A stretch of 64,000 nt of DNA from Diplonema japonicum (GCA_964019335.1 OZ025740.1:124001-188000), one strand, 5' to 3'. Positions 1 through 59,192 are shown, counted from the first letter of the stretch. The notes: generated from the letters alone by a model not told the origin. Program-made: numbers and translations.

Positions 1-792
1 CTCCGCCACCCCCTCCACAGGCCCGTTGTACACCATCTGCCCGTAGCGCAGCAGCATCACACGGTGGAACAGGTCGAACACCTCACTGGAGGGCTGGTGG
101 ATCGTGCACACGATGGTGCACCCCGCCTCCGCCAACCCCCGGAGGATCTTCACGAGTTCAAACGCGTTGTGCGAGTCCAGCCCGCTCGTCGGCTCGTCCA
201 AGAAGATCAGTGACGGTGACGAGATGAGCTCCACAGCCACCGCCGTCCGCTTCATCTCACCACCAGACAGCCCAGGCGACAGGACGGACCCGATCAGCGT
301 GTCGGCACAGCGGTCCAGGTTCAGAGAGTTGATCGCCCTGTTCACCAACTCCTCCCTTTCCTCCTCACTCGAGTCGGGGAGCTTCAGGGCCGCCGTGAAG
401 TGCAGGCACTCTCGAGGGGTCTGCGTCGCGAACAGAGCATCCTTCTGCATCACGTAAGCAAGCTTCGTCTTGTACTGCTTCGGGTCCACAGCCTCCCCGT
501 TCATCGTGATGCTCCCAGAAGCCCTTCCGTAAGGAGCCCTCCCCGCCAGTACGTTCATGAGGGTGCTCTTCCCCGCCCCAGACGGGCCCATGATGGCGGT
601 CAGCTCCCCAGGACGCAGCGTCCCACCCAGGTCGCTCAGGATCTGCTTCGTCTCACCCTTGCTCAGGTCCACAACGAAGTCGAGGTTGCTCCACTTCAGG
701 GTGAGTGGCTCGATGAGAGACTTGTCATGGAAGCCGGTGCTGGTGGGGGCCTCCTCGTCGAAGGGGGCCGTCGTCGTTGGGGCGGTCGACAT
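1..792 (-). CDS. ABCG (White-type) half transporter, copy 1; 5' part only, runs off the window start
   Basis: ATG at 792. Matches 2375-3166 at offset 2374 (identical shadow-ORF translations in the track). Walker A GPSGAGKST, signature LSGGE, Walker B LIFLDEP. Confidence 0.9.
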   Translation of the reverse strand, partial: MSTAPTTTAPFDEEAPTSTGFHDKSLIEPLTLKWSNLDFVVDLSKGETKQILSDLGGTLRPGELTAIMGPSGAGKSTLMNVLAGRAPYGRASGSITMNGEAVDPKQYKTKLAYVMQKDALFATQTPRECLHFTAALKLPDSSEEEREELVNRAINSLNLDRCADTLIGSVLSPGLSGGEMKRTAVAVELISSPSLIFLDEPTSGLDSHNAFELVKILRGLAEAGCTIVCTIHQPSSEVFDLFHRVMLLRYGQMVYNGPVEGVAE

Positions 793-1336
793 AGTTTCGC
801 GGTAGTTTATTTCCTGGAAGGGTTTGGAGGGGGTAGCGATGGAAGATAACAATAGCGAGGGAAGATAACAATAAAAGAAAAGGTGCAGTAAACACAGAGA
901 AGAAAAGAAAATGAGCGCTAGCTTGACGATGCAGGTGCTAGAAAATTATTGCATGTACTTACTAATCAAAAGGAAGGAGGGAATAAAAAAGAAATTAAAA
1001 AGAAATGGGGCTTTGGTTGCAACAAATAAAAGAAGTAGTGAGGAAGTACTTTTTCTTTTCTCTTCTTTAAACCCGATGGGTTGTCGAAAACAAAGAAAAA
1101 TAAAGGAAAATAAAAACAGAATAAAAACAATAGTTAGGAAAATGGAAAAAAAACAAGGAAATATAAAAAGGTGAAAGAAAGATCTCAAAGAAAATAAGAA
1201 AGGGGGAGTGACCCTTTTCTTGGTTTCTTTGCTGGATTATTTCTTTTCTTTCACAATAGCAAAATATTTTACTTGTTGGAAAAGTTGTAAGGCTTGTGAA
1301 ATAATATCAACAAGAAAATTACAAGTCGTTTTTTTC

Positions 1337-3166
1337 TTAATGGAACTGCTGTGCCTTCCTCGCCAGCACAGTGGCGGCAACCACTCTGATGAAGACGAAG
1401 GCCCCCAGCATGATGAGGGTGTAGATCCACCAGTCGTCCCTGTTGATGTTGCTGTCCTCGATGGTGCGGGCGACCACCTCCAGTGCGAAGGTGTTGTTGT
1501 CGGGGAGGTTCTTGTCCGAGAACTCGACGATGGTGCTGAGGGCCACCCCGTACTTCAGGAAGCAGCCCCACTGAATCCAACGCATGAAGGCAGGGATCGC
1601 ATCGCTTGTGATGAAGAACCCCGCGAACAGGATCTGAGGGACGTAGATGGCCGGCACAAGGTTCACTGCCGTCTCCGCACTTGTTGTCGATGCACCAAGC
1701 AGCAGCGCCGTCGACCCAGACACAATAGCGAGGAGGGTCAGTGCAAGCACGTGAAGAAAGAAGTCCCCTTGGTAGTCGATGAGGAAGTACACCACAACAA
1801 GACCGAGCAGCTGCTGCAGGAAGGCTACCGGAACGTCGACCATCGTCTTCGCAAGGAAGTAAGCCGACGTCCCGTAGGTCCCTGTGATGTACTCTCTGAT
1901 GAAGACTGGCCGCTCTAAAGGGAACACCAGCAGCAACGGCTCCGCCGACAGGAACATCGCGTTGATGGTGAAGAATTGCAGCCCACCCCAGTGGTTCTTC
2001 ACCTTCTTCTCCACATCAGCCCCTGTATCTCCGTCCCCCCACTTGCCCCCTGACCCCATGAAGATCAACCCAATCAGAATCGCCAGCACGATCGCCATCC
2101 CGAACCTGCTCATCAGTGTCATCTCGTCACGCAGCACTTGGTAGAACTCCCGCTTCACCAGGTGTCGGAACTGCGTCACGAAGGGTGCAGGGTTCGAGTC
2201 CCACATCCCAGACGCAGCGGACACCCCTTCGATCTCACTCCCCTCCTTCACCACGCTCTGCACTGTCTGGATCAAGGGCTGCGCCTCCTCGTCTGTGATC
2301 CGCTGCACAGTCGTCATCGCGAAGTCGGCGGGGTTGTAGTTTGGTTTGCAGTGGTGGCCGTGTGCCGCGAAGTGCTCCGCCACCCCCTCCACAGGCCCGT
2401 TGTACACCATCTGCCCGTAGCGCAGCAGCATCACACGGTGGAACAGGTCGAACACCTCACTGGAGGGCTGGTGGATCGTGCACACGATGGTGCACCCCGC
2501 CTCCGCCAACCCCCGGAGGATCTTCACGAGTTCAAACGCGTTGTGCGAGTCCAGCCCGCTCGTCGGCTCGTCCAAGAAGATCAGTGACGGTGACGAGATG
2601 AGCTCCACAGCCACCGCCGTCCGCTTCATCTCACCACCAGACAGCCCAGGCGACAGGACGGACCCGATCAGCGTGTCGGCACAGCGGTCCAGGTTCAGAG
2701 AGTTGATCGCCCTGTTCACCAACTCCTCCCTTTCCTCCTCACTCGAGTCGGGGAGCTTCAGGGCCGCCGTGAAGTGCAGGCACTCTCGAGGGGTCTGCGT
2801 CGCGAACAGAGCATCCTTCTGCATCACGTAAGCAAGCTTCGTCTTGTACTGCTTCGGGTCCACAGCCTCCCCGTTCATCGTGATGCTCCCAGAAGCCCTT
2901 CCGTAAGGAGCCCTCCCCGCCAGTACGTTCATGAGGGTGCTCTTCCCCGCCCCAGACGGGCCCATGATGGCGGTCAGCTCCCCAGGACGCAGCGTCCCAC
3001 CCAGGTCGCTCAGGATCTGCTTCGTCTCACCCTTGCTCAGGTCCACAACGAAGTCGAGGTTGCTCCACTTCAGGGTGAGTGGCTCGATGAGAGACTTGTC
3101 ATGGAAGCCGGTGCTGGTGGGGGCCTCCTCGTCGAAGGGGGCCGTCGTCGTTGGGGCGGTCGACAT
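1337..3166 (-). CDS. ABCG half transporter (NBD-TMD), copy 2
   Basis: GPSGAGKST, LSGGEMKR, FLDEPTSGLD, TIHQP, NPADF and C-terminal TM helices. Start placed at ATG 3166 (MSTAPT), directly after an AG and where identity with copy 1 ends. Confidence 0.95.
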   Translation of the reverse strand: MSTAPTTTAPFDEEAPTSTGFHDKSLIEPLTLKWSNLDFVVDLSKGETKQILSDLGGTLRPGELTAIMGPSGAGKSTLMNVLAGRAPYGRASGSITMNGEAVDPKQYKTKLAYVMQKDALFATQTPRECLHFTAALKLPDSSEEEREELVNRAINSLNLDRCADTLIGSVLSPGLSGGEMKRTAVAVELISSPSLIFLDEPTSGLDSHNAFELVKILRGLAEAGCTIVCTIHQPSSEVFDLFHRVMLLRYGQMVYNGPVEGVAEHFAAHGHHCKPNYNPADFAMTTVQRITDEEAQPLIQTVQSVVKEGSEIEGVSAASGMWDSNPAPFVTQFRHLVKREFYQVLRDEMTLMSRFGMAIVLAILIGLIFMGSGGKWGDGDTGADVEKKVKNHWGGLQFFTINAMFLSAEPLLLVFPLERPVFIREYITGTYGTSAYFLAKTMVDVPVAFLQQLLGLVVVYFLIDYQGDFFLHVLALTLLAIVSGSTALLLGASTTSAETAVNLVPAIYVPQILFAGFFITSDAIPAFMRWIQWGCFLKYGVALSTIVEFSDKNLPDNNTFALEVVARTIEDSNINRDDWWIYTLIMLGAFVFIRVVAATVLARKAQQFH

Positions 3167-5235: not shown

Positions 5236-5304
5236 CAAGATTCGGCGCTCATGCTCGTCGCCCTGAGCAGGTGCGTTACGTTCTTCCACTCGGGCGCTAC
5301 CGGT
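5236..5304 (-). repeat. Family A (ribozyme-headed SINE-like) fragment
   Basis: caagattcggcgctc...ccctgagc...tacgttcttccactcgggcgctaccggt matches 59020-59102. Confidence 0.75.
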
Positions 5305-5452
5305 ATAAGGGTTGCCAGTATTCCGCAAATAAGTAAGTCCTTACTTGAAATGAAAAAAAAAATACGAGAAAAAAAAAAAAAAAAAAAAGACCGAAAAAAA
5401 ATCCGTCACACTCGGAAGAGCGAACATCCTTCTTTTTTTTTTTTTTTTTTTT

Positions 5453-7652: not shown

Positions 7653-10243
7653 GAGTGGAAGTCTTTGTGAGACGCCCCCTTGTTCTCATCTTCTACCTGC
7701 ACCTATCCCCTTTCAGCAGCGGTTTCTCCTCCTTTGGTGGTCTTGCCGGCCTTCTCCCCAGCCTGGCCGCTCTTTCTCTTCGTTCTCTCGCCCATTGTCC
7801 TTTCAACGCCTCTAGGTCATGCTTGGTCTTCGGTGATGCAAATATCGCCCTCCTGTTCCATCCGATCACCGCCTTTGTCCTCCCGATGGATCGTAGTGTG
7901 TGCACCCTTGTGCTCGGCTCAGCTGGGAAGGCCCTCCTTCCTTTCACCTTCTTCAGTACCCTCCCTAGCTCCCATGTGTGCCAGATCTTCTTCATCAGTC
8001 CATGCAATCTCCTCGCTTTCTGCTGTACTTCTGCGAGATCCCCCCAGCTTCCCTCCAAGGGTCTTCCCGGTCACGTTCTCGAAATCCAGTGCCAGCTCCA
8101 CCGTCGACACTGACGTGTTCCTGTTGCCTGCATACCAGCGCAGTTGCCGCATCCACCTCAGCACCTCCTTCGTGTACTCCCGTAGGACATCCCCTGCCGG
8201 TAGCTTGCCGAAGTCCTTGTCCGACGGTACTGGGTGTTCTTGACCTTGTGTGATCTCCAGCCACTGGTGTGTGTGGTACACCTCCTGCCTCTTCGCTTGT
8301 AGGGCTGCGTCCCGCTCCCCCACCACCGCCAGCAGGTACCTCTGCGTTCCTTCGAGCCTTTCCCTGACATCCTTCCCTGCTCCCCTTGCAGGATGCCATG
8401 CAGCTTCGTACACGGTTCCAGCCCCCTGCGCGTCATGCCTTCGTGTTCTTCCCGCTGTTGCACTTCCTTGGCCTTTTCGCACTCCCACAGTGCGTGCTCC
8501 AGCATGTTGGGCAGCTGTTGCTCCTGACCGCAGATGTCGCAGTGTGCCGTCGTGGGTTTGGCCTGCTTAGCTTCTTGCTTCCTCGCCTCCGCAATCAGCC
8601 ACTTTTCGGTGTCCTCTTCTTCTTCTTCTTGTTCATCTTCAGCCTCGTCTTCATCCTCGTCTTCTTCTCCTTCCGCCATCGGGATGTGCTCCACCGTGTC
8701 CGTGCGCCATCCCCGTGGGTTGATGTAGAACACTGCCCCCGAGATGATCCTTCGCACGTCCCTTGCTGCAATCGGGTCCGTCACCACCAGCTTCCTCCAC
8801 AGCGCGTTGGTCTCCGCTGCTGCCGCAGCTTCCATGCCCCCCATGGTGCTCCGTTTGCTCATGATTTCCTGTGCTTCCGCCCGCCTGAGTCGGTCCCTGA
8901 TGTAGTGCTTGTAGGGCTCCTTTTCCAGTGCGTGGGTGTCCTTCTGCTGTGCCCAGCTTAACTTGATCTGAGGCAGCCACCTTTCCATCATGTTGCCCAC
9001 CGGTCCCAGCGGTATCTTCTTCCCGCTGTACCGTTTGGCAATGGCGTCGCAGCGTGTCCACAGCTTGTCGTCCTTCTTGCAGGCTCTGTATAGGAGCATA
9101 AGTGCTCTGTATGCGGCTGTCATCTGTGGGTGGCTCGTGTGTCCCGGCAGTGTCACGGATAGTACTGTGCCTGGGTTCCTGGTGCAGTACTTCTGCCCCC
9201 AGAGCGCGTACGTGGTCTCCTTCACCAGCGTGGCCATTTGTCCCGTTTTCGGCGGTGAGAATGGGCAGTCGTAGAGGCAGCTCGGTAGGATCGTGCTGCT
9301 GATGATCTTCGCCTTCTGCTGAAAGGACAACGGCGTTGCTCCCAGCCTGCTCAGCGTCCCGAGTGCCTCCGCCGTCCTGTCGCCGTTGGTTTGCGGCCTG
9401 CCGTCTGTCCGCAGCTTGGCTCCCAGTACTCCTACAGTCCGTGTCGGCTGCAGTTCCTCGCCTTTCACCTTCACCTCCGGTGTCTTCCTGTTCACTGCAA
9501 AGGTCTTCGTCTTCCTGGTGTTGAGCTTCATCCCCACCTGTTTGCAGAAGGCTTCCACTGCGTCTACGCCTTCCTGCAACGCCGCACCGAGCCGTGCCAA
9601 GAGGTATGCATCGTCCGCGTAAGACAGCGAGCGGACCCCTGTGTCGTTCTCCACCTGCTTCATTAGTACCGCCAACAGCGCGTTGATGAGTACCACTGAA
9701 ATCGGGCATCCCTGAAGGATTCCATTGGTTGTGTGGAACTCCTCCCCCACGCCTGCTGCGTACCTGAACCGTCTTCGCATGCCTGCGTACATTCCTTTCA
9801 GTGCCCTGAGGATGCCTGTGTCCATGCCCATGTCCTCCACCAGCTCCAGAACCAGCTGTTGCGGTACACTGTCAAAGCATTTCGCAAAGTCGAGTGCCAC
9901 CCCGACTAGCGGTTTCCCCTCCAGAATGGATTCTTCGATGTCAAGGGCGAGGTCCAAAAGTGCGTCCTCTGTCCCGAAACCAGTGCGGAATCCGTATTGC
10001 TTGTCGTGTATCCATTTCTCCTGCCAGATGAGGATATCAGACAGTCGCGCGCATGCCCAGAGTCTGTACACCGCAGATGTGACTGTGATAGGCCTGTGCT
10101 CCAGTGGTCCCGCATCGTCGCACTTCGGTACGAGGGTAACCAGTGCCGTTTTCATGGCTTCCGGCCACCTCCCCGTTGCTTCGATCGCATGGAAGAGCAT
10201 CGCCCAGGCGTCTAGTACTGACTCGCTGCTGCAACCTCGCTGT
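7637..10243 (-). mobile_element. 5'-truncated non-LTR retrotransposon (RT + Zn knuckle + C-terminal domain), two frameshifts
   Basis: RT motifs RPITVTS, QYGF, LDFAKCFD, GILQGCPIS, YADD, then CDIC..HALWEC. The ORF continues across shifts near 8375 and 8040-8045 (6 C here versus 5 C in the 17461 copy). Ends in an (AT)n/T tail. Confidence 0.93.
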
Positions 10244-10318
10244 TGTCTCAAAAAAAAAAACACGCGCGACAAGAAAAAAAAGGAAAAAAAAAAAAGTAAG
10301 GATAAAAAAAAAAAAGAG

Positions 10319-10597
10319 ATATATATATGTGAGTTAAGGAAGTCTGAGATGCCCCCCTTTTTCTCATCCTCTACCTGCACCACACATAAAAAAAAAAAAA
10401 ATAAAATAAAAAAAGCTCGGTTGATTGTTTGTGCAAAGTACGTAAACTTGTTCCATCGAGAAAAAAAAAAGAGTCGGTTGATTGTTGTTTGTGCACAGCC
10501 GGGGTTAACCTGTAGAAGGAGAAGCCACTACTCTTTTTAGCACCAACAATTCATTATCAATAATATTATTATATTGTTTTTCTTGTTCATGCAAAAA
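10319..10597 (-). mobile_element. Miniature composite: YR-element 5' leader + YR internal piece + LINE 3' end
   Basis: 10486-10597 matches 19406-19513; 10471-10501 matches 17654-17683; 10319-10380 matches the LINE terminus 17059-17124. Confidence 0.7.
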
Positions 10598-25646: not shown

Positions 25647-25792
25647 AGGGTTGCTTTCTGTTTTAGTTGCTGCATTGTTTTAAATAATAGCTCACAGCTG
25701 ACTGTTTGCTATTGTAAATCTGCAACGGCGAAAAATGACAAGAAGGGGCTGTGATTGTCAGGCAACATAAGAGGGAAACAAAACAAAAAAAC

Positions 25793-25898
25793 AAAAATGG
25801 GGCTTTGATACGCGCAACAAGGGGCCGACGAGGAGGTCACAACAGCAAACAACGGATCTGATGTACTTTCTTATATTTCCCATGTTATCTCCACCACC
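25793..25898 (-). repeat. Family A copy, internally deleted (keeps P1 5', P2 5', P3/L3)
   Basis: ggtggtg..ataacatggg..aagtacatcagat..tttgctgttgtgacctcctcgtcgg joined to atcaaagccccattt, as at 58848. Confidence 0.75.
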
Positions 25899-26392
25899 AA
25901 AAAAAAATAAAGAGGTAAAAAGAAATCCCTGATTTTGGACGTCTTCCACGCCCCTATACAAAAAAAAAAAAAAAAAAAAAATTGAAACCATGTCAAAAAG
26001 GAGAAGCAAAAGGGTCATCAGGTTAGGCTACCACACGCGCTTCTTCCCTTTTTTTTTTTTTCTTTTTTTTTTTTTTCACGTTTAACTAAAGTATTACTTT
26101 CGGCTCGACTCCTGCACCGGAAGATGCCGGGTCCGGTGCACCTTCTTTTTGCTGACGGTTAATTTTAAACAAGCGCCGCTGATGTGTCAAAGGGGGGGAA
26201 AGGGGGGAGATACAACACGAAAAGAAATTTCGGTGTGAGTTACCGGGGAAGAACAGGCAAAAAAAAGATCAAGCAGCAAAAAAAAAAAAAAAAAAACAAA
26301 AAAAAAAAATTAGTTTAGGGCACGCTTGAGTTAGAGATTCTTTTTTTTTTTTTTTTTTTTTTTTCATTTCAATTTTTTTTTTTTTTTTTTTT

Positions 26393-34671: not shown

Positions 34672-34792
34672 GAGATAAAGGAGGCCACTGCTAGCGGTGC
34701 CTTGAACAAGTTCTTGAATACAGAGGGCGCTCGTGCAGTTTGCTGCCTGTTCGTCACCCTAGGAACAAATCTGAGTACTTTCTTATATCCCC
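34672..34792 (-). repeat. Family A copy, deleted
   Basis: gcgctcgtgcagtttgctgcctgttcgtcaccct..gtactttcttatat; terminus gagataaagga. Confidence 0.7.
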
Positions 34793-34934
34793 GTGCCAAG
34801 AAAAAAAAAATTGCGGGCCCCCCGCAATACTCAAAAAAAAAAAGAACTTCTTGTTCTTTGTGGTGGCCCCTCTGTTTTCTTATTTTACTTAATTCTTTTT
34901 TATTTGCGCCTTACGTCTACAAAAATAAAAAAAG

Positions 34935-35097: not shown

Positions 35098-35400
35098 GAG
35101 TTTAAAGGAGGCCGGTGTTGGCGGCGCCCTGCACAAGAATTCCGCGTCGTTTCCTTAATTACACGCGTGCGGTGTACAGCTCAACCCCAGCCGGGGCATT
35201 CCGGGTAACCAAGATTCGGCAATCCATTTACTCTGAGACTTGCATGGCTTAATCCTTGAAACAAGCATATGACTACTGGCAGGATCGCTCATATGCAGTT
35301 TGCTGCCTGTTCGTCACCCTGAGCATCTGCAATACGTTCTTCCACTCGGGCTTCCACATCTGATGTACTTTCTTTATATTTCCATGTTATCCCCCACCCA
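35098..35400 (-). repeat. Family A copy carrying an 18S rRNA insert
   Basis: Matches 58955-59175 except for an insert at 35221-35286 and loss of P3/P1'. Confidence 0.8.
35221..35286 (-). rRNA. 66-nt fragment of the SSU (18S) rRNA 5' end (not a gene)
   Basis: - strand reads GATCCTGCCAGTAGTCATATGCTTGTTTCAAGGATTAAGCCATGCAAGTCTCAG, the conserved eukaryotic 18S start. Confidence 0.92.
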
Positions 35401-42159: not shown

Positions 42160-42478
42160 TTTAAGGGTGCCTGCAGTATGTGGCAGGGCGCCCTGCTCAA
42201 GTATCGTCTACTTGATTACAGGGGGCGCGCCTCGGCCTAGTTGTAGCTTCTTCTGCGTTCCGCGTCGTGTCCTTAATGCGTGCGGTGTGCAACTCAACCC
42301 CAGCCATGGCGCCCCTGGTAACCAAGATTCTGAGCCCGTGCAGTTTGCTGCCTGAGCATCTGCGATACGTTCTTCCACTCGGGCGCTACCGGTGATGACC
42401 GACGTGGAGGTCAACAGCGAACAACGCATCTGATGTACTTCTTTATATTTCCATATTTCTGTGTTATCCCACTACCCC
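42160..42478 (-). repeat. Family A copy, near full length but J4/2 deleted
   Basis: Has GGTAGTG..ACC TCCACGTC GGT CATCACC GG but lacks gggtgacgaaca. Confidence 0.85.
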
Positions 42479-45626: not shown

Positions 45627-47369
45627 TCACTGCAGAACAGAATAAGAAGCACCCACGGAGATGGCCTCCCTCAGAGACTCAACAGCTAACCGAACAGATT
45701 GTGGTGCTTCCACCCCTACCTTCTCCTGTGCATCAAGGATCTCAACCGCCTCATCCCCTTCCCCCATCAAGTACTTCAAACAAGCTGTATTGTAAGGACC
45801 CCACACATCATCAGACACATGGTACAGCCACTCACCTTCATGGGTGCCACTAGCTTTCACAGAACATTCAGTCACCTCAAACACACGAAGTGGTGCCTCC
45901 CTGCCCCTCACAGTAACATCGACAGGGAGAAGCCTCATGTCATACAAAAACGCCAGCTCCCTCTGAACAGAGCCATCACAGGTCACCTTGTGCCCCTCGT
46001 GCCGACCGAACCTCTCCAGCAGCGACGCCGTCACAGCCACCTGACCCATGATCGCGAACACCTTCAGCTCGTTGTTCCCAACAGGGCCACAGTGTGCACT
46101 CCCGCTGCACAGACCAGAAGACACAGCCAACTCTTTGTTGTTCTTTCCCATCTCCATGAGGGAGTCAGCCGCCTTCCGAGCATGACCCACACACCGCTTC
46201 GCAGCATTGAACGAGGAGTGAACATGGTCCCCAACAACGACACCCACAACACCACCGTGTTTCCTGACTGAGAGCAGGACGGCTGTCATGAAACTGTCGT
46301 AAGTGTGACTCAGAAAAATGGAAGGGCTGTCCTCCAATGCCTTCTGCGACCCAAGCATGTTTGTCACAGTGCTTGTCACCAGCTTCTTGTAATTATCAGG
46401 TATTATGGTCCGCACCTCATCGTTATTCCTTGACTCTCTACCTTTGCTGTCGTGGCTTGAGGGAAGAGTAATGTTGCTCATCCGCCCGTCATTGCTGTTG
46501 GAATGAGTAAGACTGCCATCACAATCATCACTGCCACTGAAATTCTCACGGAACCTCTCAAAACAGGACTGAGGGAGGTAAGGACGGTAGGTGTGGAGGT
46601 TCGCAAGAATGCTGTCGAACGCTGTCTGCAAGGGGGGAGGGAGGGGGGAGTCGGTGAGGGCTGTCTCCGCTCCCTCCAAGTCGAAACGGGAAAGACACTC
46701 TGCAATCCACTCAGAGGCGGTGATCACGTTCTGCATGGACTTCCGTTCCTTTTTAAGTCCAGAAGCAAAGCCACGCGTGAAGTAGAAGTCGAGGAGGAAA
46801 ACTCCCAACGGGAACCCAAATGATTCTATAACCTTCTCTAAACTCTTGGGACATGGCAGTGTGTTGCAGCCGCACGCCATCTCTCTCCTCTCTTCCTGGC
46901 TTGGGAGGAACCCATGGTCGACATCGAAGAGGCCGAAGCGGAGCCACATTTCGATGGATGATATGGTGAGCCAGATGCTGACCATTGCGATGAGGTTCAT
47001 GTTGACACGGACAGGGAGGTCGCACACCAAGGCAATGTCTACCAAAAGTATCAAAGAAGGCCATGCCCGATCCTCCAGCCACACGATTAAACTCCAGTCT
47101 CGGTGGATAAGAAACAACCCTGACAAGTACAGCATCATCTCCACCAATCCGTTTCGTATCTTCCTTTCGACAAGCATCTGCACAAACAAACCTATCCAAA
47201 TCAGGTACGCTATTCCTCGAGATCTAGAGCCCGAGTTGCGAACACGTGAAACATATCCCACAAGGAAGAGGATCATTCCTACCATACATATTGTGAGCAG
47301 TGCCTTCTTCCTGAACACAGTCGGCTGATCGTCATCAGGTAGCAGCACCCTTCTAAAGAAACACGACAT
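45627..47369 (-). CDS. Cyclase-like protein, copy 2
   Basis: Paralogue; C-terminal half near-identical to copy 1. Confidence 0.82.
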   Translation of the reverse strand: MSCFFRRVLLPDDDQPTVFRKKALLTICMVGMILFLVGYVSRVRNSGSRSRGIAYLIWIGLFVQMLVERKIRNGLVEMMLYLSGLFLIHRDWSLIVWLEDRAWPSLILLVDIALVCDLPVRVNMNLIAMVSIWLTISSIEMWLRFGLFDVDHGFLPSQEERREMACGCNTLPCPKSLEKVIESFGFPLGVFLLDFYFTRGFASGLKKERKSMQNVITASEWIAECLSRFDLEGAETALTDSPLPPPLQTAFDSILANLHTYRPYLPQSCFERFRENFSGSDDCDGSLTHSNSNDGRMSNITLPSSHDSKGRESRNNDEVRTIIPDNYKKLVTSTVTNMLGSQKALEDSPSIFLSHTYDSFMTAVLLSVRKHGGVVGVVVGDHVHSSFNAAKRCVGHARKAADSLMEMGKNNKELAVSSGLCSGSAHCGPVGNNELKVFAIMGQVAVTASLLERFGRHEGHKVTCDGSVQRELAFLYDMRLLPVDVTVRGREAPLRVFEVTECSVKASGTHEGEWLYHVSDDVWGPYNTACLKYLMGEGDEAVEILDAQEKVGVEAPQSVRLAVESLREAISVGASYSVLQ

Positions 47370-47773: not shown

Positions 47774-49516
47774 TCACTGCAGAACAGAACAAGAAGCACC
47801 CATGGAGATGGCCTCCCTCAGAGACTCAACAGCTAACCGAACAGATTGTGGTGCTTCCACCCCTACCTTCTCCTGTGCATCAAGGATCTCAACCGCCTCA
47901 TCCCCTTCCCCTATCAAGTACTTCAAACAAGCTGTATTGTAAAGACACCACACATCATCAGACACATGGTACAGCCACTCACCTTCATGGGTGCCACTAG
48001 CTTTCACAGAACATTCAGTCACCTCAAACACACGAAGTGGTGCCGCCCTGCCCCTCACAGCAACATCGACAGGGAGAAGCCTCATGTCGTACAAGAACGC
48101 CAGCTCCCTCTGAACAGAGCCATCACAGGTCACCTTGTGCCCCTCGTGCCGACCGAACCTCTCCAGCAGCGACGCCGTCACAGCCACCTGACCCATGATC
48201 GCGAACACCTTCAGTTCGTTGTTCCCAACAGGGCCACAGTGTGCACTCCCGCTGCACAGACCAGAAGACACAGCCACAGCCAGCCCCTCCTTGTTCTTTC
48301 CCATCTCCATGAGGGAGTCAGCCGCCTTCCGAGCATGACCCACACACCGCTTCGCAGCATTGAACGAGGAGTGAACATGGTCCCCAACAACGACACCCAC
48401 AACACCACCGTGTTTCCTGACTGAGAGCAGGACGGCTGTCATGAAACTGTCGTAAGTGTGACACACAAAGATGGAAGGATTGTCCTCCAATGCCTTCTGC
48501 GACCCAAGCATGTTTGTCACAGTGCTTGTCACCAGCTTCTTGTAATTATCAGGTATTATGGTCCGCAACATCTCATCGTTATTCTTTGACTCTCTACCTT
48601 TGCTGTCGTGGCTAGAGGGAATGCTCATCTGCCCGTCGCTGCGGGTGAAATGGGTATGGCTGTCACTACAATCATCGCTGACTCCGAAATCCTCACGGAA
48701 CCTCTCAAAACAGGACTGAGGGAGGTAAGGACGGTAGGTGTGAAGGTTTGCAAGGATGCTGTCGAACGCTGTCTGCAAGGGGGGAGGGAGGGGGGAGTCA
48801 GTGAGGGCTGTCTCCGCTCCCTCCAAGTCGAAACGGGAAAGGCACTCTGCAATCCACTCAGAGGCGGTGATCACGTTCTGCATGGACTCCCGTTCCGTTT
48901 CAAGTCCAGAAGAAAAACCACGCGTGAAGTAGAAATCGAGGAGGAAGACAGAAATCGGTGCAACGAATGTGATGAGAACGCTCGTGAACCCCCTGGGGCA
49001 CGGTGGTGTGTTGCAGTCACACACCTTTCCCATAGTTGATTGATGTGCGAGGAGGAAATAATCAACATCTATAAGGCCGAAACGGAGCCAGATTTCGACG
49101 GAAGAGATGGCAAGCCAGATGCTGACCATTGCGATGATGTTCTTGCTGACACGGACAGGGAGGTCGCACACCAAGGCAATGTCCACTAAAATCACGAAAG
49201 AAGACCATGCCCGCTCCATGGACCACTTGACGTAGCTCCAGTCCCTGTGAAGAATTGAAATCCCGGACAAGTACAGCATGCACTCCACTGCCCCTTTTCT
49301 TATCTTCTTCTCAACAAGCATTTGCACAAGAACAACCAACCAAGAGAAGAACCCCAATTCTCGAATCGCGAAGGACACGAAGTCCTCAGGTGACAACGTC
49401 AGTGCAAACACATACAACACAACAGCAATGCAGGCCAACACGACCAGCACCTTCTTCCTGAATATAGTTGGCTGATCGTCATCAGGTAGCAGCACATGTC
49501 TTAAGATACACGACAT
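47774..49516 (-). CDS. Cyclase-like protein, copy 3
   Basis: Paralogue, 580 aa. Confidence 0.82.
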   Translation of the reverse strand: MSCILRHVLLPDDDQPTIFRKKVLVVLACIAVVLYVFALTLSPEDFVSFAIRELGFFSWLVVLVQMLVEKKIRKGAVECMLYLSGISILHRDWSYVKWSMERAWSSFVILVDIALVCDLPVRVSKNIIAMVSIWLAISSVEIWLRFGLIDVDYFLLAHQSTMGKVCDCNTPPCPRGFTSVLITFVAPISVFLLDFYFTRGFSSGLETERESMQNVITASEWIAECLSRFDLEGAETALTDSPLPPPLQTAFDSILANLHTYRPYLPQSCFERFREDFGVSDDCSDSHTHFTRSDGQMSIPSSHDSKGRESKNNDEMLRTIIPDNYKKLVTSTVTNMLGSQKALEDNPSIFVCHTYDSFMTAVLLSVRKHGGVVGVVVGDHVHSSFNAAKRCVGHARKAADSLMEMGKNKEGLAVAVSSGLCSGSAHCGPVGNNELKVFAIMGQVAVTASLLERFGRHEGHKVTCDGSVQRELAFLYDMRLLPVDVAVRGRAAPLRVFEVTECSVKASGTHEGEWLYHVSDDVWCLYNTACLKYLIGEGDEAVEILDAQEKVGVEAPQSVRLAVESLREAISMGASCSVLQ

Positions 49517-52397: not shown

Positions 52398-52577
52398 ATT
52401 AAGGGTGCCTGCAGTATGTGGCATCGTCTACTTGATTACAGGGCGCGCCTCGGCCTAGCTGCTTCTTCTGCGTTCCGCGTGTCTTAATGCGTGCGGTGTG
52501 CAACTCAACCCAGCCAGGGCGCCCCTGATAACCAAGATTCGGCGCTCGTGCAGTTTGCTGCCTGTTCGTCACCCTGA
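52398..52577 (-). repeat. Family A copy lacking its 5' half
   Basis: Matches 42160-42350 and 58908-59064. Confidence 0.8.
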
Positions 52578-52705
52578 AAAAAGTGATTTAGAAAAAGAAA
52601 ACCGCTAGACTGCCAAACATTCTTTCTGAACCGTTGGCCTACCTCCGTTGGCCTGCCAAACATTCTTTCTGAACCGTTGGCCTACCTACTGAAAAGTAGT
52701 TTCTT

Positions 52706-54475
52706 TTACAGAAGAAAGCGACAAGAAGCACCCATGGAGATGGCCTCCCTCAGAGACTCAACAGCTAACCGAACAGATTGTGGTGCTTCCACCCCTACCT
52801 TCTCCTGTGCATCAAGGATCTCAACCGCCTCATCCCCTTCCCCTATCAAGTACTTCAAACAAGCTGTATTGTAAAGACTCCACACATCATCAGACACATG
52901 GTACAGCCACTCACCTTCATGGTTGCCTTTAGCTGCTTGCACAGAACATTCAGTCACCTCAAACACACGAAGTGGTGCCTCCCTGCCCCTCACAGCAACA
53001 TCGACAGGGAGAAGCCTCATGTCGTACAAAAACGCCAGTTCCCTCTGAACAGAGCCATCACAGGTCACCTTGTGCCCCTCGTGCCGACCGAACCTCTCCA
53101 GCAGCGACGCCGTCACAGCCACCTGACCCATGATCGCGAACACCTTCAGCTCATTGTTCCCAACAGGGCCACAGTGTGCACTCCCGCTGCACAGACCAGA
53201 AGACACAGCCAACTCTTTGTTGTTCTTTCCCATCTCCATGAGGGAGTCAGCCGCCCTCCGAGCATGACCCACACACCGCTTCGCAGCATTGAACGAGGAG
53301 TGAACATGGTCCCCAACAACGACACCCACAACACCACCGTGTTTCCTGACTGAGAGCAGGACGGCTGTCATGAAACTGTCGTAAGTGTGACACACAAAGA
53401 TGGAAGGGCTGTCCTCCAATGCCTTCTGCGACCCAAGCATGTTTGTCACAGTGCTTGTCACCAGCTTCTTGTAATTATCAATCGTTGGAGACCGCATTAC
53501 CTCAAATTTATCCTTGGGGTTATCAGTGCTGTTCATGGGATCTCTCTCTTTTCTGTAGTTTGAGGGAAGAGTCTCGTTGCTCATCGCCCTGTCGCTATCG
53601 GTGCTAGAAAGGGTAAGACTACCGGCACTTTCTTCTGTGACTCTGAAATCCTCACGGAACCTCTCAAAACAGGACTGAGGGAGGTAAGGACGGTAGGTGT
53701 GGAGGTTTGCAAGGATGCTGTCGAACGCTGTCTGCAAGGGGGGAGGGAGGGGGGAGTCAGTGAGGGCTGTCTTAGCTCCCTCCAAGTCGAAACGGGAAAG
53801 GCACTCTGCAATCCACTCAGAGGCGGTGATCACGTTCTGCATGGACTTCCGTTCCTTTTCAAGTCCAGAAGCAAAGCCACGCGTGAAGTAGAAGTCGAGG
53901 AGGAAAACCAAAACCGGTCCAAGGAATGTGGTGAAAATGCTCTCGAACCCCCTGGGGCACGGTGGTGTGTCGCAGTCACACACCTTACCTATCGCTTCTT
54001 GGCTTGGGAGGAGGAAATAATCAATATCTAAAAGACCGAAACGGAGCCAAATTTCGATGGAAATGATGATGAGCCAGATGCTGACCATTGCGATGAGGTT
54101 CATGTTGACACGGACAGGGAGGTCGCACACCAAGGCAATGTCTACCAAAAGTATCAAAGAAGGCCATGCGCGCTCCATGGACCACTTGACGTAGCTCCAG
54201 TCCCTGTGAAGAATTGAAATCCCGGACAAGTACAGCATGCACTCCACTGCCCCTTTTCTTATCTTCTTCTCAACAAGCATTTGCACAAGAACAACCAACC
54301 AAGAGAAGAACCCCAATTCTCGAATCGCGAAGGACACGAAATTCTCAGGTGTCGCCGACAGTGCTAATATATACACCGACACAGCGACGCAGGCCAACAC
54401 TACCAGCACCTTCTTCCTGAACACAGTTGGCTGATCGTCATCAGGTAGCAGCACATGTCTTAAGATACACGACAT
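52706..54475 (-). CDS. Cyclase-like protein, copy 4
   Basis: Start MSCILRHV, set by paralogy. Confidence 0.82.
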   Translation of the reverse strand: MSCILRHVLLPDDDQPTVFRKKVLVVLACVAVSVYILALSATPENFVSFAIRELGFFSWLVVLVQMLVEKKIRKGAVECMLYLSGISILHRDWSYVKWSMERAWPSLILLVDIALVCDLPVRVNMNLIAMVSIWLIIISIEIWLRFGLLDIDYFLLPSQEAIGKVCDCDTPPCPRGFESIFTTFLGPVLVFLLDFYFTRGFASGLEKERKSMQNVITASEWIAECLSRFDLEGAKTALTDSPLPPPLQTAFDSILANLHTYRPYLPQSCFERFREDFRVTEESAGSLTLSSTDSDRAMSNETLPSNYRKERDPMNSTDNPKDKFEVMRSPTIDNYKKLVTSTVTNMLGSQKALEDSPSIFVCHTYDSFMTAVLLSVRKHGGVVGVVVGDHVHSSFNAAKRCVGHARRAADSLMEMGKNNKELAVSSGLCSGSAHCGPVGNNELKVFAIMGQVAVTASLLERFGRHEGHKVTCDGSVQRELAFLYDMRLLPVDVAVRGREAPLRVFEVTECSVQAAKGNHEGEWLYHVSDDVWSLYNTACLKYLIGEGDEAVEILDAQEKVGVEAPQSVRLAVESLREAISMGASCRFLL

Positions 54476-54731
54476 TGTTCCCCTTTTGTTGCCCCACTTT
54501 TCTTTTTTTGGTTTTGGCATCTTTTTTCAACCGAAAAAATGCAGAATTCGTAAATGAAATCACTCATTGTACTGGAAAGTAGAGCTTAAACATTTGTTGA
54601 GGAGAAGATGCTTTGCTTCACCACAACATTGGATTGGTCTTCATTAGAAAGAGGGAATCCCCTCCCTTTCCGACTGAATGGGCTGCTAAAAGGAAATTAG
54701 AAAGAAGAGTAACTACTGGAAGGTAGTTCGT

Positions 54732-56525
54732 TCACTGCAGAACAGAACAAGAAGCACCCATGGAGATGGCCTCCCTCAGAGACTCAACAGCTAACCGAAC
54801 AGATTGTGGTGCTTCCACCCCTACCTTCTCCTGTGCATCAAGGATCTCAACCGCCTCATCCCCTTCCCCTATCAAGTACTTCAAACAAGCTGTATTGTAA
54901 AGACTCCACACATCATCAGACACATGGTACAGCCACTCACCTTCATGGTTGCCACTAGCTGCTTGCACAGAACATTCAGTCACCTCAAACACACGAAGTG
55001 GTGCCTCCCTGCCCCTCACAGTAACATCGACAGGGAGAAGCCTCATGTCGTACAAGAACGCCAGCTCCCTCTGAACAGAGCCATCACAGGTCACCTTGTG
55101 CCCCTCGTGCCGACCGAACCTCTCCAGCAGCGACGCCGTCACAGCCACCTGACCCATGATCGCGAACACCTTCAGCTCGTTGTTCCCAACAGGGCCACAG
55201 TGTGCACTCCCGCTGCACAGACCAGAAGACACAGCCAACTCTTTGTTGTTCTTTCCCATCTCCATGAGGGAGTCAGCCGCCCTCCGAGCATGACCCACAC
55301 ACCGCTTCGCAGCATTGAACGAGGAGTGAACATGGTCCCCAACAACGACACCCACAACACCACCGTGTTTCCTGACTGAGAGCAGGACGGCTGTCATGAA
55401 ACTGTCGTAAGTGTGACTCAGAAAAATGGAAGGGCTGTCCTCCAATGCCTTCTGCGACCCAAGCATGTTTGTCACAGTGCTTGTCACCAGCTTCTTGTAA
55501 TTCTCAATCGTTGGAGACTCACATTTATCGATGCTGCTCGCTGTCGTCAGCCGTTTGCTGTTGTGGCTTGAGGGAAGAGAATCGCCGCTCATCTGCCTGA
55601 CTTTCACCCGCTCGTCGCTGCCGGTGCCGGAATGAGTAGAGTTGCCATTATCGTCACTATCATCACTGCCACTGAAATCCTCATTCTCACGGAGAGTCTC
55701 GAAACAGGACTGAGGGAGGTAAGGACGGTAGGTGTGGAGGTTTGCAAGGATGCTGTCGAACGCTGTCTGCAAGGGGGGAGGGAGGGGGGAGTTGGTGAGG
55801 GCTGTCTCCGCTCCCTCCAAGTCGAAGCGGGAAAGACACTCTGCAATCCACTCAGAGGCGGTGATCACGTTCTGCATGGACTTCCGTTCCTTTTGAAGGT
55901 CCGAAGCAAAGCCACGCGTGAAGTAGAAGTCGAGGAGGAAGATCGTAAGTTGGACAGCTAAACCATCGAGGGCGGTTACAAAGGGAACAGGACAAGGAAG
56001 CTGAGCACAGTCACACCAGTCAGCTTTGACCACCTCTTCTTTGTGAACGAAAATGGGATCGATGTCGAAGAGGCCGAAGCGAAGCGACGATTCGATGGAT
56101 GATATGATGAGCCAGATGCTGACCATTGCGATGAGGTTCCTGTTGACACGGACAGGGAGGTCGCACACCAAGGCAATGTCCACTAAAACTACAAAGATCG
56201 GCCACGATCTAGCTGACATTTCAGCTAAGTCCAACCAGTCATGGATGATCATAGAAATTCCAAATAGGTACAGCATGCACTCTGCAACACTATTCCGCAG
56301 TCTTCGCTCGAGAAGAAGCTGAAGCAGAAACCCTAGAGATCCCAGAAAACCAGGGTCACAGACACAGTATAAAAGAGATACCGGGCCTCGTGATGAAATA
56401 TGAGATGAAGCTATACCAAGAAACAAAGACACACTTAGCACCGCCATGGCAAGTAGCACTTTCTTTCTGAAGGCAGTCAGACAGTCATCACCAGGAAGCA
56501 ACACTCTTCGGAGCAAAAAGAACAT
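54732..56525 (-). CDS. Cyclase-like protein, copy 5
   Basis: Start MFFLLRRV, set by paralogy. Confidence 0.82.
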   Translation of the reverse strand: MFFLLRRVLLPGDDCLTAFRKKVLLAMAVLSVSLFLGIASSHISSRGPVSLLYCVCDPGFLGSLGFLLQLLLERRLRNSVAECMLYLFGISMIIHDWLDLAEMSARSWPIFVVLVDIALVCDLPVRVNRNLIAMVSIWLIISSIESSLRFGLFDIDPIFVHKEEVVKADWCDCAQLPCPVPFVTALDGLAVQLTIFLLDFYFTRGFASDLQKERKSMQNVITASEWIAECLSRFDLEGAETALTNSPLPPPLQTAFDSILANLHTYRPYLPQSCFETLRENEDFSGSDDSDDNGNSTHSGTGSDERVKVRQMSGDSLPSSHNSKRLTTASSIDKCESPTIENYKKLVTSTVTNMLGSQKALEDSPSIFLSHTYDSFMTAVLLSVRKHGGVVGVVVGDHVHSSFNAAKRCVGHARRAADSLMEMGKNNKELAVSSGLCSGSAHCGPVGNNELKVFAIMGQVAVTASLLERFGRHEGHKVTCDGSVQRELAFLYDMRLLPVDVTVRGREAPLRVFEVTECSVQAASGNHEGEWLYHVSDDVWSLYNTACLKYLIGEGDEAVEILDAQEKVGVEAPQSVRLAVESLREAISMGASCSVLQ

Positions 56526-56802
56526 TTTTTTTGTTTTTCTTTTGCTGTTGTTGGCGTCACTGTTTTTACCGGTATATACATAAACCGGTGGAATTGAGAG
56601 CATTCTTCCTTCTTTTTTTTTTGATCTTTTTTGCTCTCTTGTTTTGGAAAGTTTTCCGTTCGATTCGCGATAAAAAAAGTTGTCTCGATTTTAGTGGTGT
56701 GTGACACAGTGGCCACCCTTGTGAAACTTCGCCCCGAAGCCTCCCAAGTCCCCTGTGGTCCCGTAGAATGTAAAAGTGGAGAGGTAAAGAAAGCTTGGAA
56801 AT

Positions 56803-58815: not shown

Positions 58816-58846
<31 letters not shown>

Positions 58847-58847
58847 G

Positions 58848-59177
58848 AAAATGGGGCTTTGATTGCAACACTAGGTGGCGTTAAGCGTGCAACGAAGCAC
58901 GAAATACCTACTTGATTACAGGGGGCGCTCCTCGGCCGAGCAGTAGCTTCTTCTGCGTTCCGCGTCGTGTCCTTAATGCATGCGGTGTGCTCAACCCTAG
59001 CCGGGGCGTCCCGGGTAACCAAGATTCTGCGCTCGTGCAGTTTGCTGCCTGTTCGTCACCCTGAGCATCTGCGATACGTTCTTCCACTCGGGCGCTACCG
59101 GTGATGACCGACGAGGAGGTCAACAGCGAACAACACATCTGATGTACTTCTTATATTTCCATGTTATCCCCACCACC
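58848..59177 (-). mobile_element. Family A, most complete copy (SINE-like, ribozyme-headed)
   Basis: Homology with the other six copies ends sharply at 59177, which is ribozyme G1. Confidence 0.75.
59040..59177 (-). ncRNA. HDV-like self-cleaving ribozyme (predicted)
   Basis: P1 GGTGGTG/CATCACC, P3 ACC/GGT, L3 TCCTCGTC, P1.1 CC/GG, P4 CGCCC-GAGT/GCTC-A-GGGTG, J4/2 CGAA (catalytic C at 59055), P2 GTTCGCTGTTG/CAGGCAGCAAAC, all in canonical order. Confidence 0.8.
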
Positions 59178-59192
59178 TTAAGAAAGTATAGG

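What the first reader, a model, noticed from the sequence alone, without database searches (positions are those of the whole stretch)
59040..59177. Complete HDV-like ribozyme fold at the 5' end of a dispersed repeat
Seen on the - strand, every element of the nested double pseudoknot in order. P1 GGTGGTG (59177-59171) pairs with CATCACC (59106-59100). J1/2 is long (~39 nt). P2 pairs 59131-59121 with 59051-59040. P3 is ACC/GGT with L3 TCCTCGTC (HDV: UCCUCGCU). P1.1 GG is at 59099-59098, followed by P4 and J4/2 CGAA with C at 59055. Repeat homology begins exactly at G1. The 25898 copy has TTTGCTGT, which pairs even better with GCAGCAAA. Known: R2, L1Tc/ingi and SIDER2 elements carry 5' HDV-like ribozymes. 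Inference: an active ribozyme cleaving between 59178 and 59177, unlike the trypanosomatid 77-nt signature in sequence.
Basis: partly seen in the sequence, partly recalled or inferred. Interest (0 to 1): 0.92.

Follow-up and report, generated by a model that had tools for sequence, protein, structure and literature searches.

The report
Self-cutting RNA heading a retroposon
A short mobile element copied hundreds of times in this marine protist genome begins with an HDV-like self-cleaving RNA fold that most likely trims the element's RNA to its exact 5' end; this device is already known from other retrotransposons but apparently not from this lineage.

Summary
On the - strand, 59177->59040 carries every element of an HDV-like nested double pseudoknot: P1 of 7 bp, P3 ACC/GGU, L3 UCCUCGUC, P1.1 GG, P4, J4/2 CGAA with C59055, and P2. 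These are the first 138 nt of a 326-nt retroposon ("family A"; about 240 exact 5' and 3' ends; the best-matching copies 92-100% alike). Homology starts at G59177 in 23 of 25 near-complete copies sampled by their 3' end. My descriptor finds only this site in the window (0.03 expected by chance).

Six other retroposon families in the same genome, a diplonemid-like euglenozoan, start with the same architecture. Their catalytic-core letters are identical, while P1, P2 and P4 differ in sequence but stay complementary. One family heads an autonomous APE+RT LINE.

Spliced-leader-fused copies fix the RNA sense. They are enriched for ribozyme deletions (4/11 against 1/23).

Cleavage itself is untested. 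Family A alone has G1-C instead of G.U, and Rfam gives no hit.

Verdict: a new member of a known kind (R2, RTE and L1Tc-type 5' ribozymes). The scan had already flagged this motif on other DNA of this genome (113 unchecked notes).

The parts
59178..59185 (-). Upstream flank (tttcttaa), not part of the repeat. The predicted scissile bond lies between 59178 and 59177.
   Evidence: Flanks differ between copies up to the -1 base.
59171..59177 (-). P1 5' strand GGUGGUG (G1 = 59177), the first nucleotides of the repeat.
59132..59170 (-). Long J1/2 (39 nt). A possible peripheral hairpin pairs nt 9-18 (59169-59160) with nt 41-50 (59137-59128).
   Evidence: The hairpin is weak: -5.2 kcal/mol, z = -0.65.
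59121..59131 (-). P2 5' strand GUUCGCUGUUG.
59107..59120 (-). P3 (ACC 59120-59118 with GGU 59109-59107) enclosing L3 UCCUCGUC (59117-59110). C62 and C63 of L3 pair with the P1.1 GG.
   Evidence: L3 letters U1, C2, C3 and G6 are invariant in 9 representatives.
59100..59106 (-). P1 3' strand CAUCACC.
59098..59099 (-). P1.1 GG.
59057..59094 (-). P4 (CGCCCGAG ... CUC-A-GGGUG).
59052..59056 (-). J4/2 A-CGAA. The predicted catalytic C is at 59055.
   Evidence: A C follows P4 plus one purine in all nine representatives.
59040..59051 (-). P2 3' strand CAGGCAGCAAAC.
58852..59177 (-). The whole family A retroposon copy (326 nt, ending ...CAAUCAAAGCCCCA). Its ribozyme region is identical to the family consensus except T at nt 104, a minority variant.
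58819..58851 (-). 3' T-rich tract (TTTT C T28) that follows the element.
   Evidence: Its length varies from 2 to 38 T between copies.

Best explanation
59177-59040 (- strand) is a genuine HDV-like self-cleaving ribozyme. It forms the 5' module of a 326-nt non-autonomous non-LTR retroposon, which I call family A.

The element lies in sense orientation inside a one-directional gene cluster, so it is transcribed as part of a longer RNA. The ribozyme folds into the nested double pseudoknot, and C59055 in J4/2 cuts the chain 5' of G59177. This releases an RNA that starts with 5'-OH G1. A LINE reverse transcriptase copies that RNA to its very end and inserts it into T(n)A sites, so nearly every full copy starts at G1.

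Shown here: the fold, its position, the RNA sense, its conservation by covariation in six sister families, and its presence at the head of an APE+RT LINE.

Inferred: catalysis in vivo, co-transcription, and the integration steps.
For: (1) All fold elements are at the stated coordinates. The descriptor gives 1 hit in the window against 0.03 expected.

(2) Seven families (A to G, nine representatives) share P3 ACC/GGU (GCC/GGC in family G), L3 U-C-C-N-N-G-N, P1.1 GG, and a C just after P4. Their P1, P2 and P4 differ in sequence but remain complementary, with 2 to 6 pair types at most helix positions. Shuffled flanks equal the real helices in at most 0.3% of 1000 trials each.

(3) The invariant letters are the ones known to be essential in HDV ribozymes: G1, C21/C22-G38/G39, the U20.G25 pair, and C75. 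This is established knowledge; for the L3 G see also PMC3774820.

(4) Family D's ribozyme (L104:22-131) directly precedes a 2008-aa ORF with APE and RT domains on the same strand.

(5) The 5' end is sharp. In the sample chosen by 3' end, 23 of 25 near-complete copies start at G1, and the -1 base is variable.

(6) Thirteen copies carry a spliced leader fused to G2 or G1, eleven of them family A. This fixes the RNA sense and shows that read-through precursors exist.

(7) SL-retaining family A copies have ribozyme deletions of at least 5 nt in 4/11 against 1/23 naked copies (one-sided Fisher p = 0.029; SL-G2 type 4/8, p = 0.0098). This is what is expected if an intact ribozyme removes upstream RNA.

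(8) 5S rRNA chimeras also join exactly at G1.

(9) Sister family C gives Rfam's HDV-F-prausnitzii as its best hit among 4227 models, though below threshold (25.9 and 22.5 bits).

(10) With P1, P3 and P4 enforced, the fold reaches -29.5 kcal/mol before P2 and P1.1 are counted, against a nested MFE of -36.3.
Against: There is no direct evidence of cleavage. All public runs were available only as contigs, which cannot show RNA ends.

Family A has G1-C78 at the base of P1, whereas the other eight representatives have G.U. P2 has a C x A mismatch, and the J1/2 hairpin is weak.

There is no Rfam hit for family A, even at E <= 10. The nested MFE fold is not unusually stable (z = 0.45).

Seven SL-fused family A copies, and 5S-fused copy L239, have intact-looking ribozymes. 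Cleavage is therefore either incomplete or these junctions arose after cleavage.

An A sits at -1 in 70% of family A copies, in most sister-family examples, and in some 5S junctions. A cleaved RNA cannot carry this base, so it has to be target-derived or non-templated.
Confidence: 0.78

Rival explanations
1. The fold is a relic. Family A inherited the ribozyme module from a LINE, but its own version (G1-C78, mismatched P2) no longer cleaves. Its 5' end is set instead by transcription initiation at or next to A(-1)/G1 from an internal or upstream promoter, as Pr77 does in L1Tc.
For: G1-C occurs only in family A. A is preferred at -1, even at 5S junctions. Intact ribozymes occur in 7 SL-fused copies. 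There is no Rfam hit. PMC3383444 describes a dual promoter/ribozyme at the L1Tc 5' end.
Against: The core letters are intact in the young, abundant subfamily: 150 copies score 180-197 bits against the family model. The only feature the seven families share at their 5' ends is the ribozyme fold, not a sequence motif that could act as a promoter. The -1 base is variable. Ribozyme deletions are enriched in copies that kept upstream RNA.
Confidence: 0.13
2. Trans-splicing defines the 5' end. The T-run plus AG (A at -1, G1) is a 3' splice site, and the element RNA is cut there by the spliceosome.
For: Upstream flanks are polypyrimidine tracts followed by A|G. Eight copies carry SL fused exactly to G2.
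Against: A trans-spliced RNA carries the 39-nt leader, yet only 11 family A copies do, against about 240 exact 5' ends. Naked copies keep G1, which splicing after AG would remove.
Confidence: 0.04
3. The element really lies on the + strand as an A-tailed SINE that ends ...CCACC-TT-A(n). The - strand 'ribozyme' would then be antisense and meaningless.
For: On the + strand the copies end in CCACC followed by T(T) and an A-run of variable length, which is how a poly(A) tail looks.
Against: The spliced leader, always a 5' addition, is fused in sense to the - strand start. In family D the same module lies in sense with the APE/RT ORF. All family A pieces in the window lie in sense with the genes.
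Confidence: 0.02
4. Chance resemblance to the HDV fold.
For: The loose descriptor would give about 30 chance hits in a genome of 62.5 Mb (rate taken). The nested MFE shows no extra stability.
Against: The match sits exactly at a repeat boundary. L3 and J4/2 match HDV letter for letter. The same design recurs with covariation in six other families.
Confidence: 0.01

Closest known systems
HDV-like ribozymes at the 5' end of R2, RTE and Baggins non-LTR retrotransposons (Eickbush & Eickbush 2010; Ruminski et al. 2011, as cited in PMC4908430; PMC3774820)
   Same: A nested double pseudoknot sits at the exact 5' end of the element RNA and releases it from a co-transcript. The L3 U..CC..G, P1.1 GG and J4/2 C are the same. 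5' junctions are variable when cleavage is at the element's own first base (PMC3774820 abstract).
   Different: The host is a trans-splicing euglenozoan. Insertion is not site-specific in rDNA. The elements end in T-runs, not A-tails or R2-type 3' UTRs. Family A is a 326-nt non-coding element. J1/2 is long (39-64 nt) in six of the seven families.
L1TcRz / Pr77 hallmark of L1Tc, NARTc, ingi, RIME and SIDER in trypanosomatids (PMC3185411, PMC4035085, PMC3383444)
   Same: It is an HDV-like ribozyme in the first nucleotides of LINEs and their short non-autonomous derivatives, within Euglenozoa with polycistronic transcription.
   Different: According to PMC4035085, the trypanosomatid ribozymes differ strongly from HDV and R2 in P1 and P1.1. 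The ribozymes here keep the canonical HDV core letters. The LINE's relatives are diplonemid proteins at 34-50% identity. Sequence similarity to Pr77 was not tested.
Large HDV-like ribozymes with a peripheral J1/2 (P1.2) domain, such as drz-Agam-2-1 (PMC4908430)
   Same: A long insertion lies between P1 and P2. Families C and F have stable J1/2 hairpins (z = -2.3 to -3.7).
   Different: In families A, D and E the J1/2 hairpin is weak or absent. Whether it accelerates cleavage here is unknown.
Rfam RF02682, the HDV ribozyme from Faecalibacterium prausnitzii
   Same: It is the best Rfam match of sister family C, sharing CACCUC..GUGGU, GGCAACG and CGGCU-AGA.
   Different: The scores are below the gathering threshold (25.9 and 22.5 against 44 bits). 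Family A does not match at all.
R2-derived SIDE elements and NARTc: non-autonomous elements that keep the parent's 5' ribozyme (PMC3414825, PMC3383444)
   Same: These are short non-coding retroposons headed by the ribozyme of a LINE lineage.
   Different: The LINE partner of family A, which should share its 3' end ...CAAUCAAAGCCCCA, was not found in the DNA I could fetch.

Membership tests
HDV-like self-cleaving ribozymes | Strand order P1 - J1/2 - P2 - P3 - L3 - P3' - P1' - P1.1 - P4 - J4/2 - P2' (nested double pseudoknot). | tested here: met
   All helices are canonical apart from one C x A in the distal part of P2.
HDV-like self-cleaving ribozymes | The cleavage-site nucleotide G1 opens a 6-7 bp P1. 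| tested here: met
   GGUGGUG/CAUCACC, 7 bp. G1 is the first base of the repeat.
HDV-like self-cleaving ribozymes | A G1.U wobble closes P1. This is typical of HDV, CPEB3 and most relatives. I treat it as common rather than obligatory, on my own knowledge. | tested here: not met
   Family A has G1-C78. The eight other representatives in this genome have G.U. Some family A relatives have CATCACT, which gives G.U.
HDV-like self-cleaving ribozymes | A 3-bp P3 closing an L3 of 7-8 nt with U, CC and G at positions 1, 2-3 and 6. | tested here: met
   ACC/GGU with UCCUCGUC. These four letters are invariant in 9 of 9 representatives.
HDV-like self-cleaving ribozymes | P1.1: two G-C pairs between the L3 CC and the GG directly after P1'. 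| tested here: met
   C62, C63 with G79, G80 (59099-59098). Found in 9 of 9 representatives.
HDV-like self-cleaving ribozymes | A catalytic C in J4/2 just after P4, followed by a purine-rich linker into P2'. | tested here: met
   A-C59055-GAA, where HDV has G-C75-GAA. All families have (G/A)-C-N-A...
HDV-like self-cleaving ribozymes | Helices supported by covariation. | tested here: met
   Within family A the top-matching copies are too alike to tell. Across seven families P1, P2 and P4 co-vary, and P3 does so once; control. The counts come from my own script, because the CM-based alignment was unreliable.
HDV-like self-cleaving ribozymes | A score above the gathering threshold of an Rfam HDV-type model. 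| tested here: not met
   No hit for the window. Family C is sub-threshold on RF02682. Rfam's HDV-type models are each built on narrow groups.
HDV-like self-cleaving ribozymes | Divalent-ion-dependent self-scission giving a 5'-OH and a 2',3'-cyclic phosphate. | not testable with these tools
   Only contigs of public runs were served.
Non-LTR retroposons processed by a 5' ribozyme (R2 / RTE / L1Tc type) | The ribozyme occupies the exact 5' end of the mobile unit. | tested here: met
Non-LTR retroposons processed by a 5' ribozyme (R2 / RTE / L1Tc type) | An autonomous APE/RT element carries the same kind of ribozyme. | tested here: met
   Family D: L104 has the ribozyme at 22-131, then a 2008-aa ORF with Exo_endo_phos and RVT_1 domains. 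The partner of family A itself was not identified.
Non-LTR retroposons processed by a 5' ribozyme (R2 / RTE / L1Tc type) | Retroposition hallmarks: dispersed copies, 5' truncations and target-site duplications. | tested here: inconclusive
   Dispersed copies and 5'-truncated copies are clear. TSDs such as ATTTCTTTTTTT (L023) and TTTTTTAAAA (L073) are visible. Overall they do not exceed permuted pairs, because the flanks are of low complexity.
Trypanosomatid Pr77 / L1TcRz | Sequence similarity to the 77-nt hallmark. | not tested

The most novel reading that the evidence does not exclude
The 5S rRNA-ribozyme-body units could be Pol III-driven source genes. These units consist of 5S plus its trailer joined to G1 of family A at five or more loci, and also to families D and G.

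In this reading the 5S head supplies the internal promoter and the 3' T-run is the terminator. The ribozyme then cuts the promoter-bearing head off. The released RNA is promoter-less and U-tailed, and it primes reverse transcription on A-runs of the opposite strand.

That would be a SINE design in which a ribozyme enforces a 'master gene' regime. It would also explain why these retroposons have T-tails instead of A-tails.
Probability: 0.2. Interest if true: 0.8.

Novelty: new member of a known kind. Interest (0 to 1): 0.5.

Why it matters
This extends the 5' HDV-like ribozyme strategy of retrotransposons to a diplonemid-type marine protist, where at least seven families, LINE and SINE-like, use it.

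It also provides natural sequence variation that maps which parts of the fold are free to change. In this genome, ribozyme cleavage, spliced-leader trans-splicing and template switching to 5S and 18S rRNA all leave readable scars at one and the same nucleotide.

For genome annotation, it explains a large share of the intergenic repeats and their strict sense orientation.

Tried and rejected
**Rfam.** The gathering and E-value scans of the site found nothing for family A.

**MFE folding.** It showed no signal (z = 0.45). Nested folding cannot represent the pseudoknot.

**Covariance model R1 on the whole genome.** It returned only the 150 best, near-identical copies, so it gave no covariation. 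Its alignment of the sister families was out of register. I therefore counted pairs with my own anchored script and controlled by shuffling the flanks.

**Target-site duplication statistics.** They did not exceed permuted pairs.

**Metagenome scan with the family A core.** It gave 120 matches, and none of those whose immediate flanks I screened resembled family A. They look like chance matches in unrelated contigs.

**Read laying.** All runs were served as contigs, so there was no information on RNA ends. Two seawater RNA libraries do hold family A-like contigs.

**The look-up of encoding contigs.** The Diplonema papillatum LINE homologues could therefore not be checked for upstream ribozymes.

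**The genome search.** Later DNA came from the fetch from genomes.

**LINE partner of family A.** A search through its 3' end found nothing in the fetched DNA.

**Reverse-orientation reading (+ strand A-tailed SINE).** I considered it early and rejected it on the SL-fused copies and the ORF orientation of LINE D.

Full report
**1. What is at the site**

Read on the - strand, the window gives the following, starting at 59177:
- GGUGGUG (P1 5' strand)
- a 39-nt J1/2
- GUUCGCUGUUG (P2 5' strand)
- ACC (P3)
- UCCUCGUC (L3)
- GGU (P3')
- CAUCACC (P1')
- GG (P1.1)
- UAG
- a P4 of 8 bp with one bulge (59094-59057)
- A-CGAA (J4/2, with the C at 59055)
- CAGGCAGCAAAC (P2 3' strand, ending at 59040)

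Every coordinate in the finding is correct. L3 matches the genomic HDV L3 (UCCUCGCU) in its first six letters. J4/2 matches HDV C75-G-A-A. The HDV sequences are from my own knowledge of the literature.

I wrote a descriptor requiring all these elements. It finds this single site on both strands of the 64-kb window. In 60 dinucleotide shuffles of the window it found 2 sites, none with UCCUCG plus CGAA. That rate would still give some 30 chance hits in a 62.5-Mb genome, so the descriptor alone is not proof.

Rfam gives nothing for this site, at gathering thresholds or at E <= 10. Nested MFE folding shows no special stability. With P1, P3 and P4 enforced, the RNA reaches -29.5 kcal/mol before P2 and P1.1 are counted, against -36.3 for the best nested fold. 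The ribozyme fold is therefore energetically competitive.

**2. The repeat**

The site is the head of a dispersed element that I call family A. It is 326 nt long, from G1 to ...CAAUCAAAGCCCCA, and is followed by a T-run of 2 to 38 T.
- There are 239 exact copies of its first 28 nt and 242 of its last 23 nt.
- The 29 other best-matching copies are 92-100% identical to the window copy, most of them 97% or more.
- 150 copies score 180-197 bits on a model of the ribozyme.
- The window copy is identical to the consensus over the ribozyme except for T at nt 104, a minority variant.

Homology begins at G1. In 47 copies with different flanks, the -1 base is A 33, G 7, T 5, C 2. I also took an unbiased sample of 40 copies chosen by their 3' end:
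- 23 start exactly at G1.
- One starts at G2 and one at nt 3.
- 11 are 41-45-nt tail-only pieces.
- 4 are otherwise truncated.

**3. Which strand is the RNA**

The flanks are T-rich on the - strand on both sides. On the + strand the element therefore looks like an A-tailed SINE, and I took that rival seriously. It fails on three counts.
- The genome uses a spliced leader..ACCAACGAUUCUAAAGCUACAGUUUCUGUACUUUAUUG. It is two letters away from 'Euglenozoa 14' in PMC3795323.
- Thirteen retroposon copies with independent flanks carry this leader fused in sense to G2 or G1 of the - strand element. Eleven of them are family A.
- All large ORFs in the window, and all family A pieces in it, are on the - strand.

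The element is thus transcribed in sense with a one-directional gene cluster. This is the situation in which a 5' processing device is needed.

**4. Independent support from sister families**

I ran a pattern for the core (ACC-UCC-not U...GGU-N7-GG). It matched 366 places against 54 for the reversed control. Fetching examples, and noting one compact ribozyme my descriptor had already found in L028, gave six further families (B to G).

Anchored parsing of nine representatives shows the following.
- **P1:** GGUGGUG/CAUCACC (A), GGGGACC/GGUUCCU (B), GGGGUC/GGCCCU (C2), GGGGCU/GGCCCU (D), GGGGGC/GCCCCU (E), GGUGGGG/CCCCACU (G).
- **P2:** GCUGUU/GGCAGC, GUUUCC/GGAAAC, GGCUGCC/GGCAGCU, GCUGGGG/CCCCAGC, CCCGGCGC/GCGCCGGG, GCUGG/CCAGC, CGCGG/CCGCG.
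- **P4:** unrelated sequences in every family, all complementary.
- **P3:** ACC/GGU, but GCC/GGC in family G.
- **Invariant in all nine:** G1, the G2-C pair, L3 positions 1, 2, 3 and 6 (U, C, C, G), the P1.1 GG, and a C one purine after P4.

These invariant letters are the known functional nucleotides of HDV ribozymes.

My parser chooses helices by complementarity, so I controlled for that. I kept each core and shuffled its flanks 1000 times. Helices as good as the real ones in all three stems arose in 0 to 0.3% of trials. In each family the P1 5' strand falls where homology between copies starts.

Family C also gives Rfam's F. prausnitzii HDV ribozyme as its best match. The scores are below threshold, at 25.9 and 22.5 bits against a gathering score of 44.

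Six of the seven families have a long J1/2 of 39-64 nt. It forms a stable hairpin in C and F but not in A, D or E. This resembles the 'large' HDV-like ribozymes with a peripheral P1.2 domain (PMC4908430).

**5. Link to an autonomous element**

In L104 the family D ribozyme (nt 22-131) is followed on the same strand by a 2008-aa ORF with an APE-type endonuclease and a reverse transcriptase. The element ends in ...CUCAUAUAUAU plus a T-run.

Its closest protein relatives are EukProt transcriptome ORFs at 80-88% identity and many Diplonema papillatum proteins at 34-50% identity. One homologue carries an OTU domain. The host is therefore a diplonemid or a close relative.

The D. papillatum genome paper mentions LINEs but no ribozymes. 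A full-text search for HDV-like ribozymes together with diplonemids found no paper that links them.

**6. Traces of function in vivo**

Three kinds of junction meet at the same nucleotide:
- genomic T(n)A targets, in most copies;
- the spliced leader, in 11 family A copies;
- the 3' trailer of 5S rRNA, at five or more family A loci with five different junction sequences, and also in families D and G.

This argues that G1 is the physical 5' end of the RNA template.

If the ribozyme is active, RNAs that kept an upstream leader should often be ribozyme-defective. Deletions of at least 5 nt inside nt 1-138 occur in 4 of 11 SL-fused copies against 1 of 23 naked copies from the unbiased sample (one-sided Fisher p = 0.029). 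For the SL-G2 class it is 4 of 8 (p = 0.0098). The samples are small and age is not controlled, so I count this as suggestive.

Seven SL-fused copies look intact. Cleavage is therefore not complete, or the attached leader interferes with it.

The public runs were served only as contigs. Two seawater RNA libraries contain family A-like contigs, but nothing can be said about RNA ends.

**7. Weak points**

- Catalysis is untested.
- Family A is the only family with G1-C instead of G.U.
- P2 has a C x A mismatch, which is repaired in L029.
- An A at -1 is preferred in all families and even at some 5S junctions. A cleaved RNA cannot carry it. Clear TSDs such as TTTTTTAAAA (L073) suggest it is often target-derived, and variable 5' junctions are known for R2 elements that cleave at their own first base (PMC3774820). 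The 5S cases remain unexplained, however, and they keep alive a rival in which RNA starts at A(-1).

**8. Comparison and verdict**

It works like, and by its tested features belongs to, the HDV-like ribozymes that process the 5' ends of non-LTR retrotransposons. These include R2, RTE and L1Tc/NARTc (PMC3774820, PMC3185411, PMC4035085).

It differs from them in several ways:
- the host lineage;
- the canonical HDV-like core, compared with the divergent trypanosomatid ribozymes;
- the long J1/2;
- T-run 3' ends in place of A-tails;
- its spread over at least seven LINE and SINE-like families.

I rate it a new member of a known kind, of moderate interest.

The scan's first-stage notes had flagged the same motif on other DNA of this genome: 113 notes, none followed up. 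Their leads on 5S-headed units, SL-headed copies and poly(T) flanks were tested here and largely hold.

Noticed in passing
G000-wide; examples L032-L054: The spliced leader followed by GT occurs 160 times in the genome, dispersed and often near contig ends. It heads several unrelated repeat families (GTCGTTCGTG.., GTACCCAATC.., GTATCGACCG..). These are retroposed trans-spliced RNAs, and true SL RNA genes may be among them.
   Followed up: partly
L238-L242, L245-L252, L257, L259 (for example G000:C91:25371-25635): Most 5S rRNA matches are not plain genes. They are 5S plus its trailer (CTAAAC or CCAAAC, with 0-5 T) joined to the start of a retroposon: family A at G1 in 5 loci, plus families D, G and others. 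Their upstream flanks are unrelated and mostly T- or A-rich. They are either template-switch chimeras of the U6/L1 kind or uncleaved Pol III co-transcripts.
   Followed up: partly
window 35221-35293 (- strand): The first ~70 nt of 18S rRNA (GAUCCUGCCAGUAGUCAUAUGC...) sit inside a family A copy. Rfam SSU_rRNA_eukarya matches model positions 1-87 with E = 9e-6.
   Followed up: yes
L267, L268, L272, L279, L281, L283, L284, L287, L291, L294, L297: 11 of 40 copies sampled by their 3' end are 41-45-nt 'tail-only' pieces that start at nt 282-286 of family A. Seven of them start at nt 286. A 5' end this discrete suggests either a separate mini-element or a preferred stop for the reverse transcriptase.
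   Followed up: no
L282: A partial spliced leader (..AAGCUACAGUUUCU) is joined to nt 31 of family A through the shared letters GUAC. This looks like microhomology-guided template switching.
   Followed up: no
all families; window 59178: An A precedes G1 in 70% of family A copies, in most sister-family examples, and in several 5S junctions, where the native 5S trailer would have T. Its source is unexplained: it could be a target base, a non-templated addition, or a true RNA start.
   Followed up: partly
L104:22-240: Every long J1/2 contains an AUG. In LINE D the J1/2 AUG (L104:65-67) opens a 601-aa frame (38..1843) that runs through the ribozyme core. The 2008-aa APE/RT frame has its first AUG at 223. 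Translation may start inside the ribozyme.
   Followed up: partly
L095-L097: Another element family shares the first ~113 nt of family A, with P1' CAUCACU (G1.U). It then switches to a different body that ends in an A-rich tail, so it lacks J4/2 and P2'. It is a chimeric or decayed head.
   Followed up: no
window 42208-42476, 25776-25912, 5242-5457, 34727-34876, 52428-52626 (- strand): Further family A pieces, all in sense with the genes. The 42.4-kb copy has a 12-nt deletion that removes CAGGGUGACGAA, including the catalytic C.
   Followed up: partly
window 52706-54520 / 54732-56603 and 45627-47369 / 47774-49516 (- strand): Two pairs of tandem ORFs of about 580-620 aa. The three of these four ORFs that I scanned have no Pfam match. 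There is also a lone RT ORF at 8158-10383.
   Followed up: no
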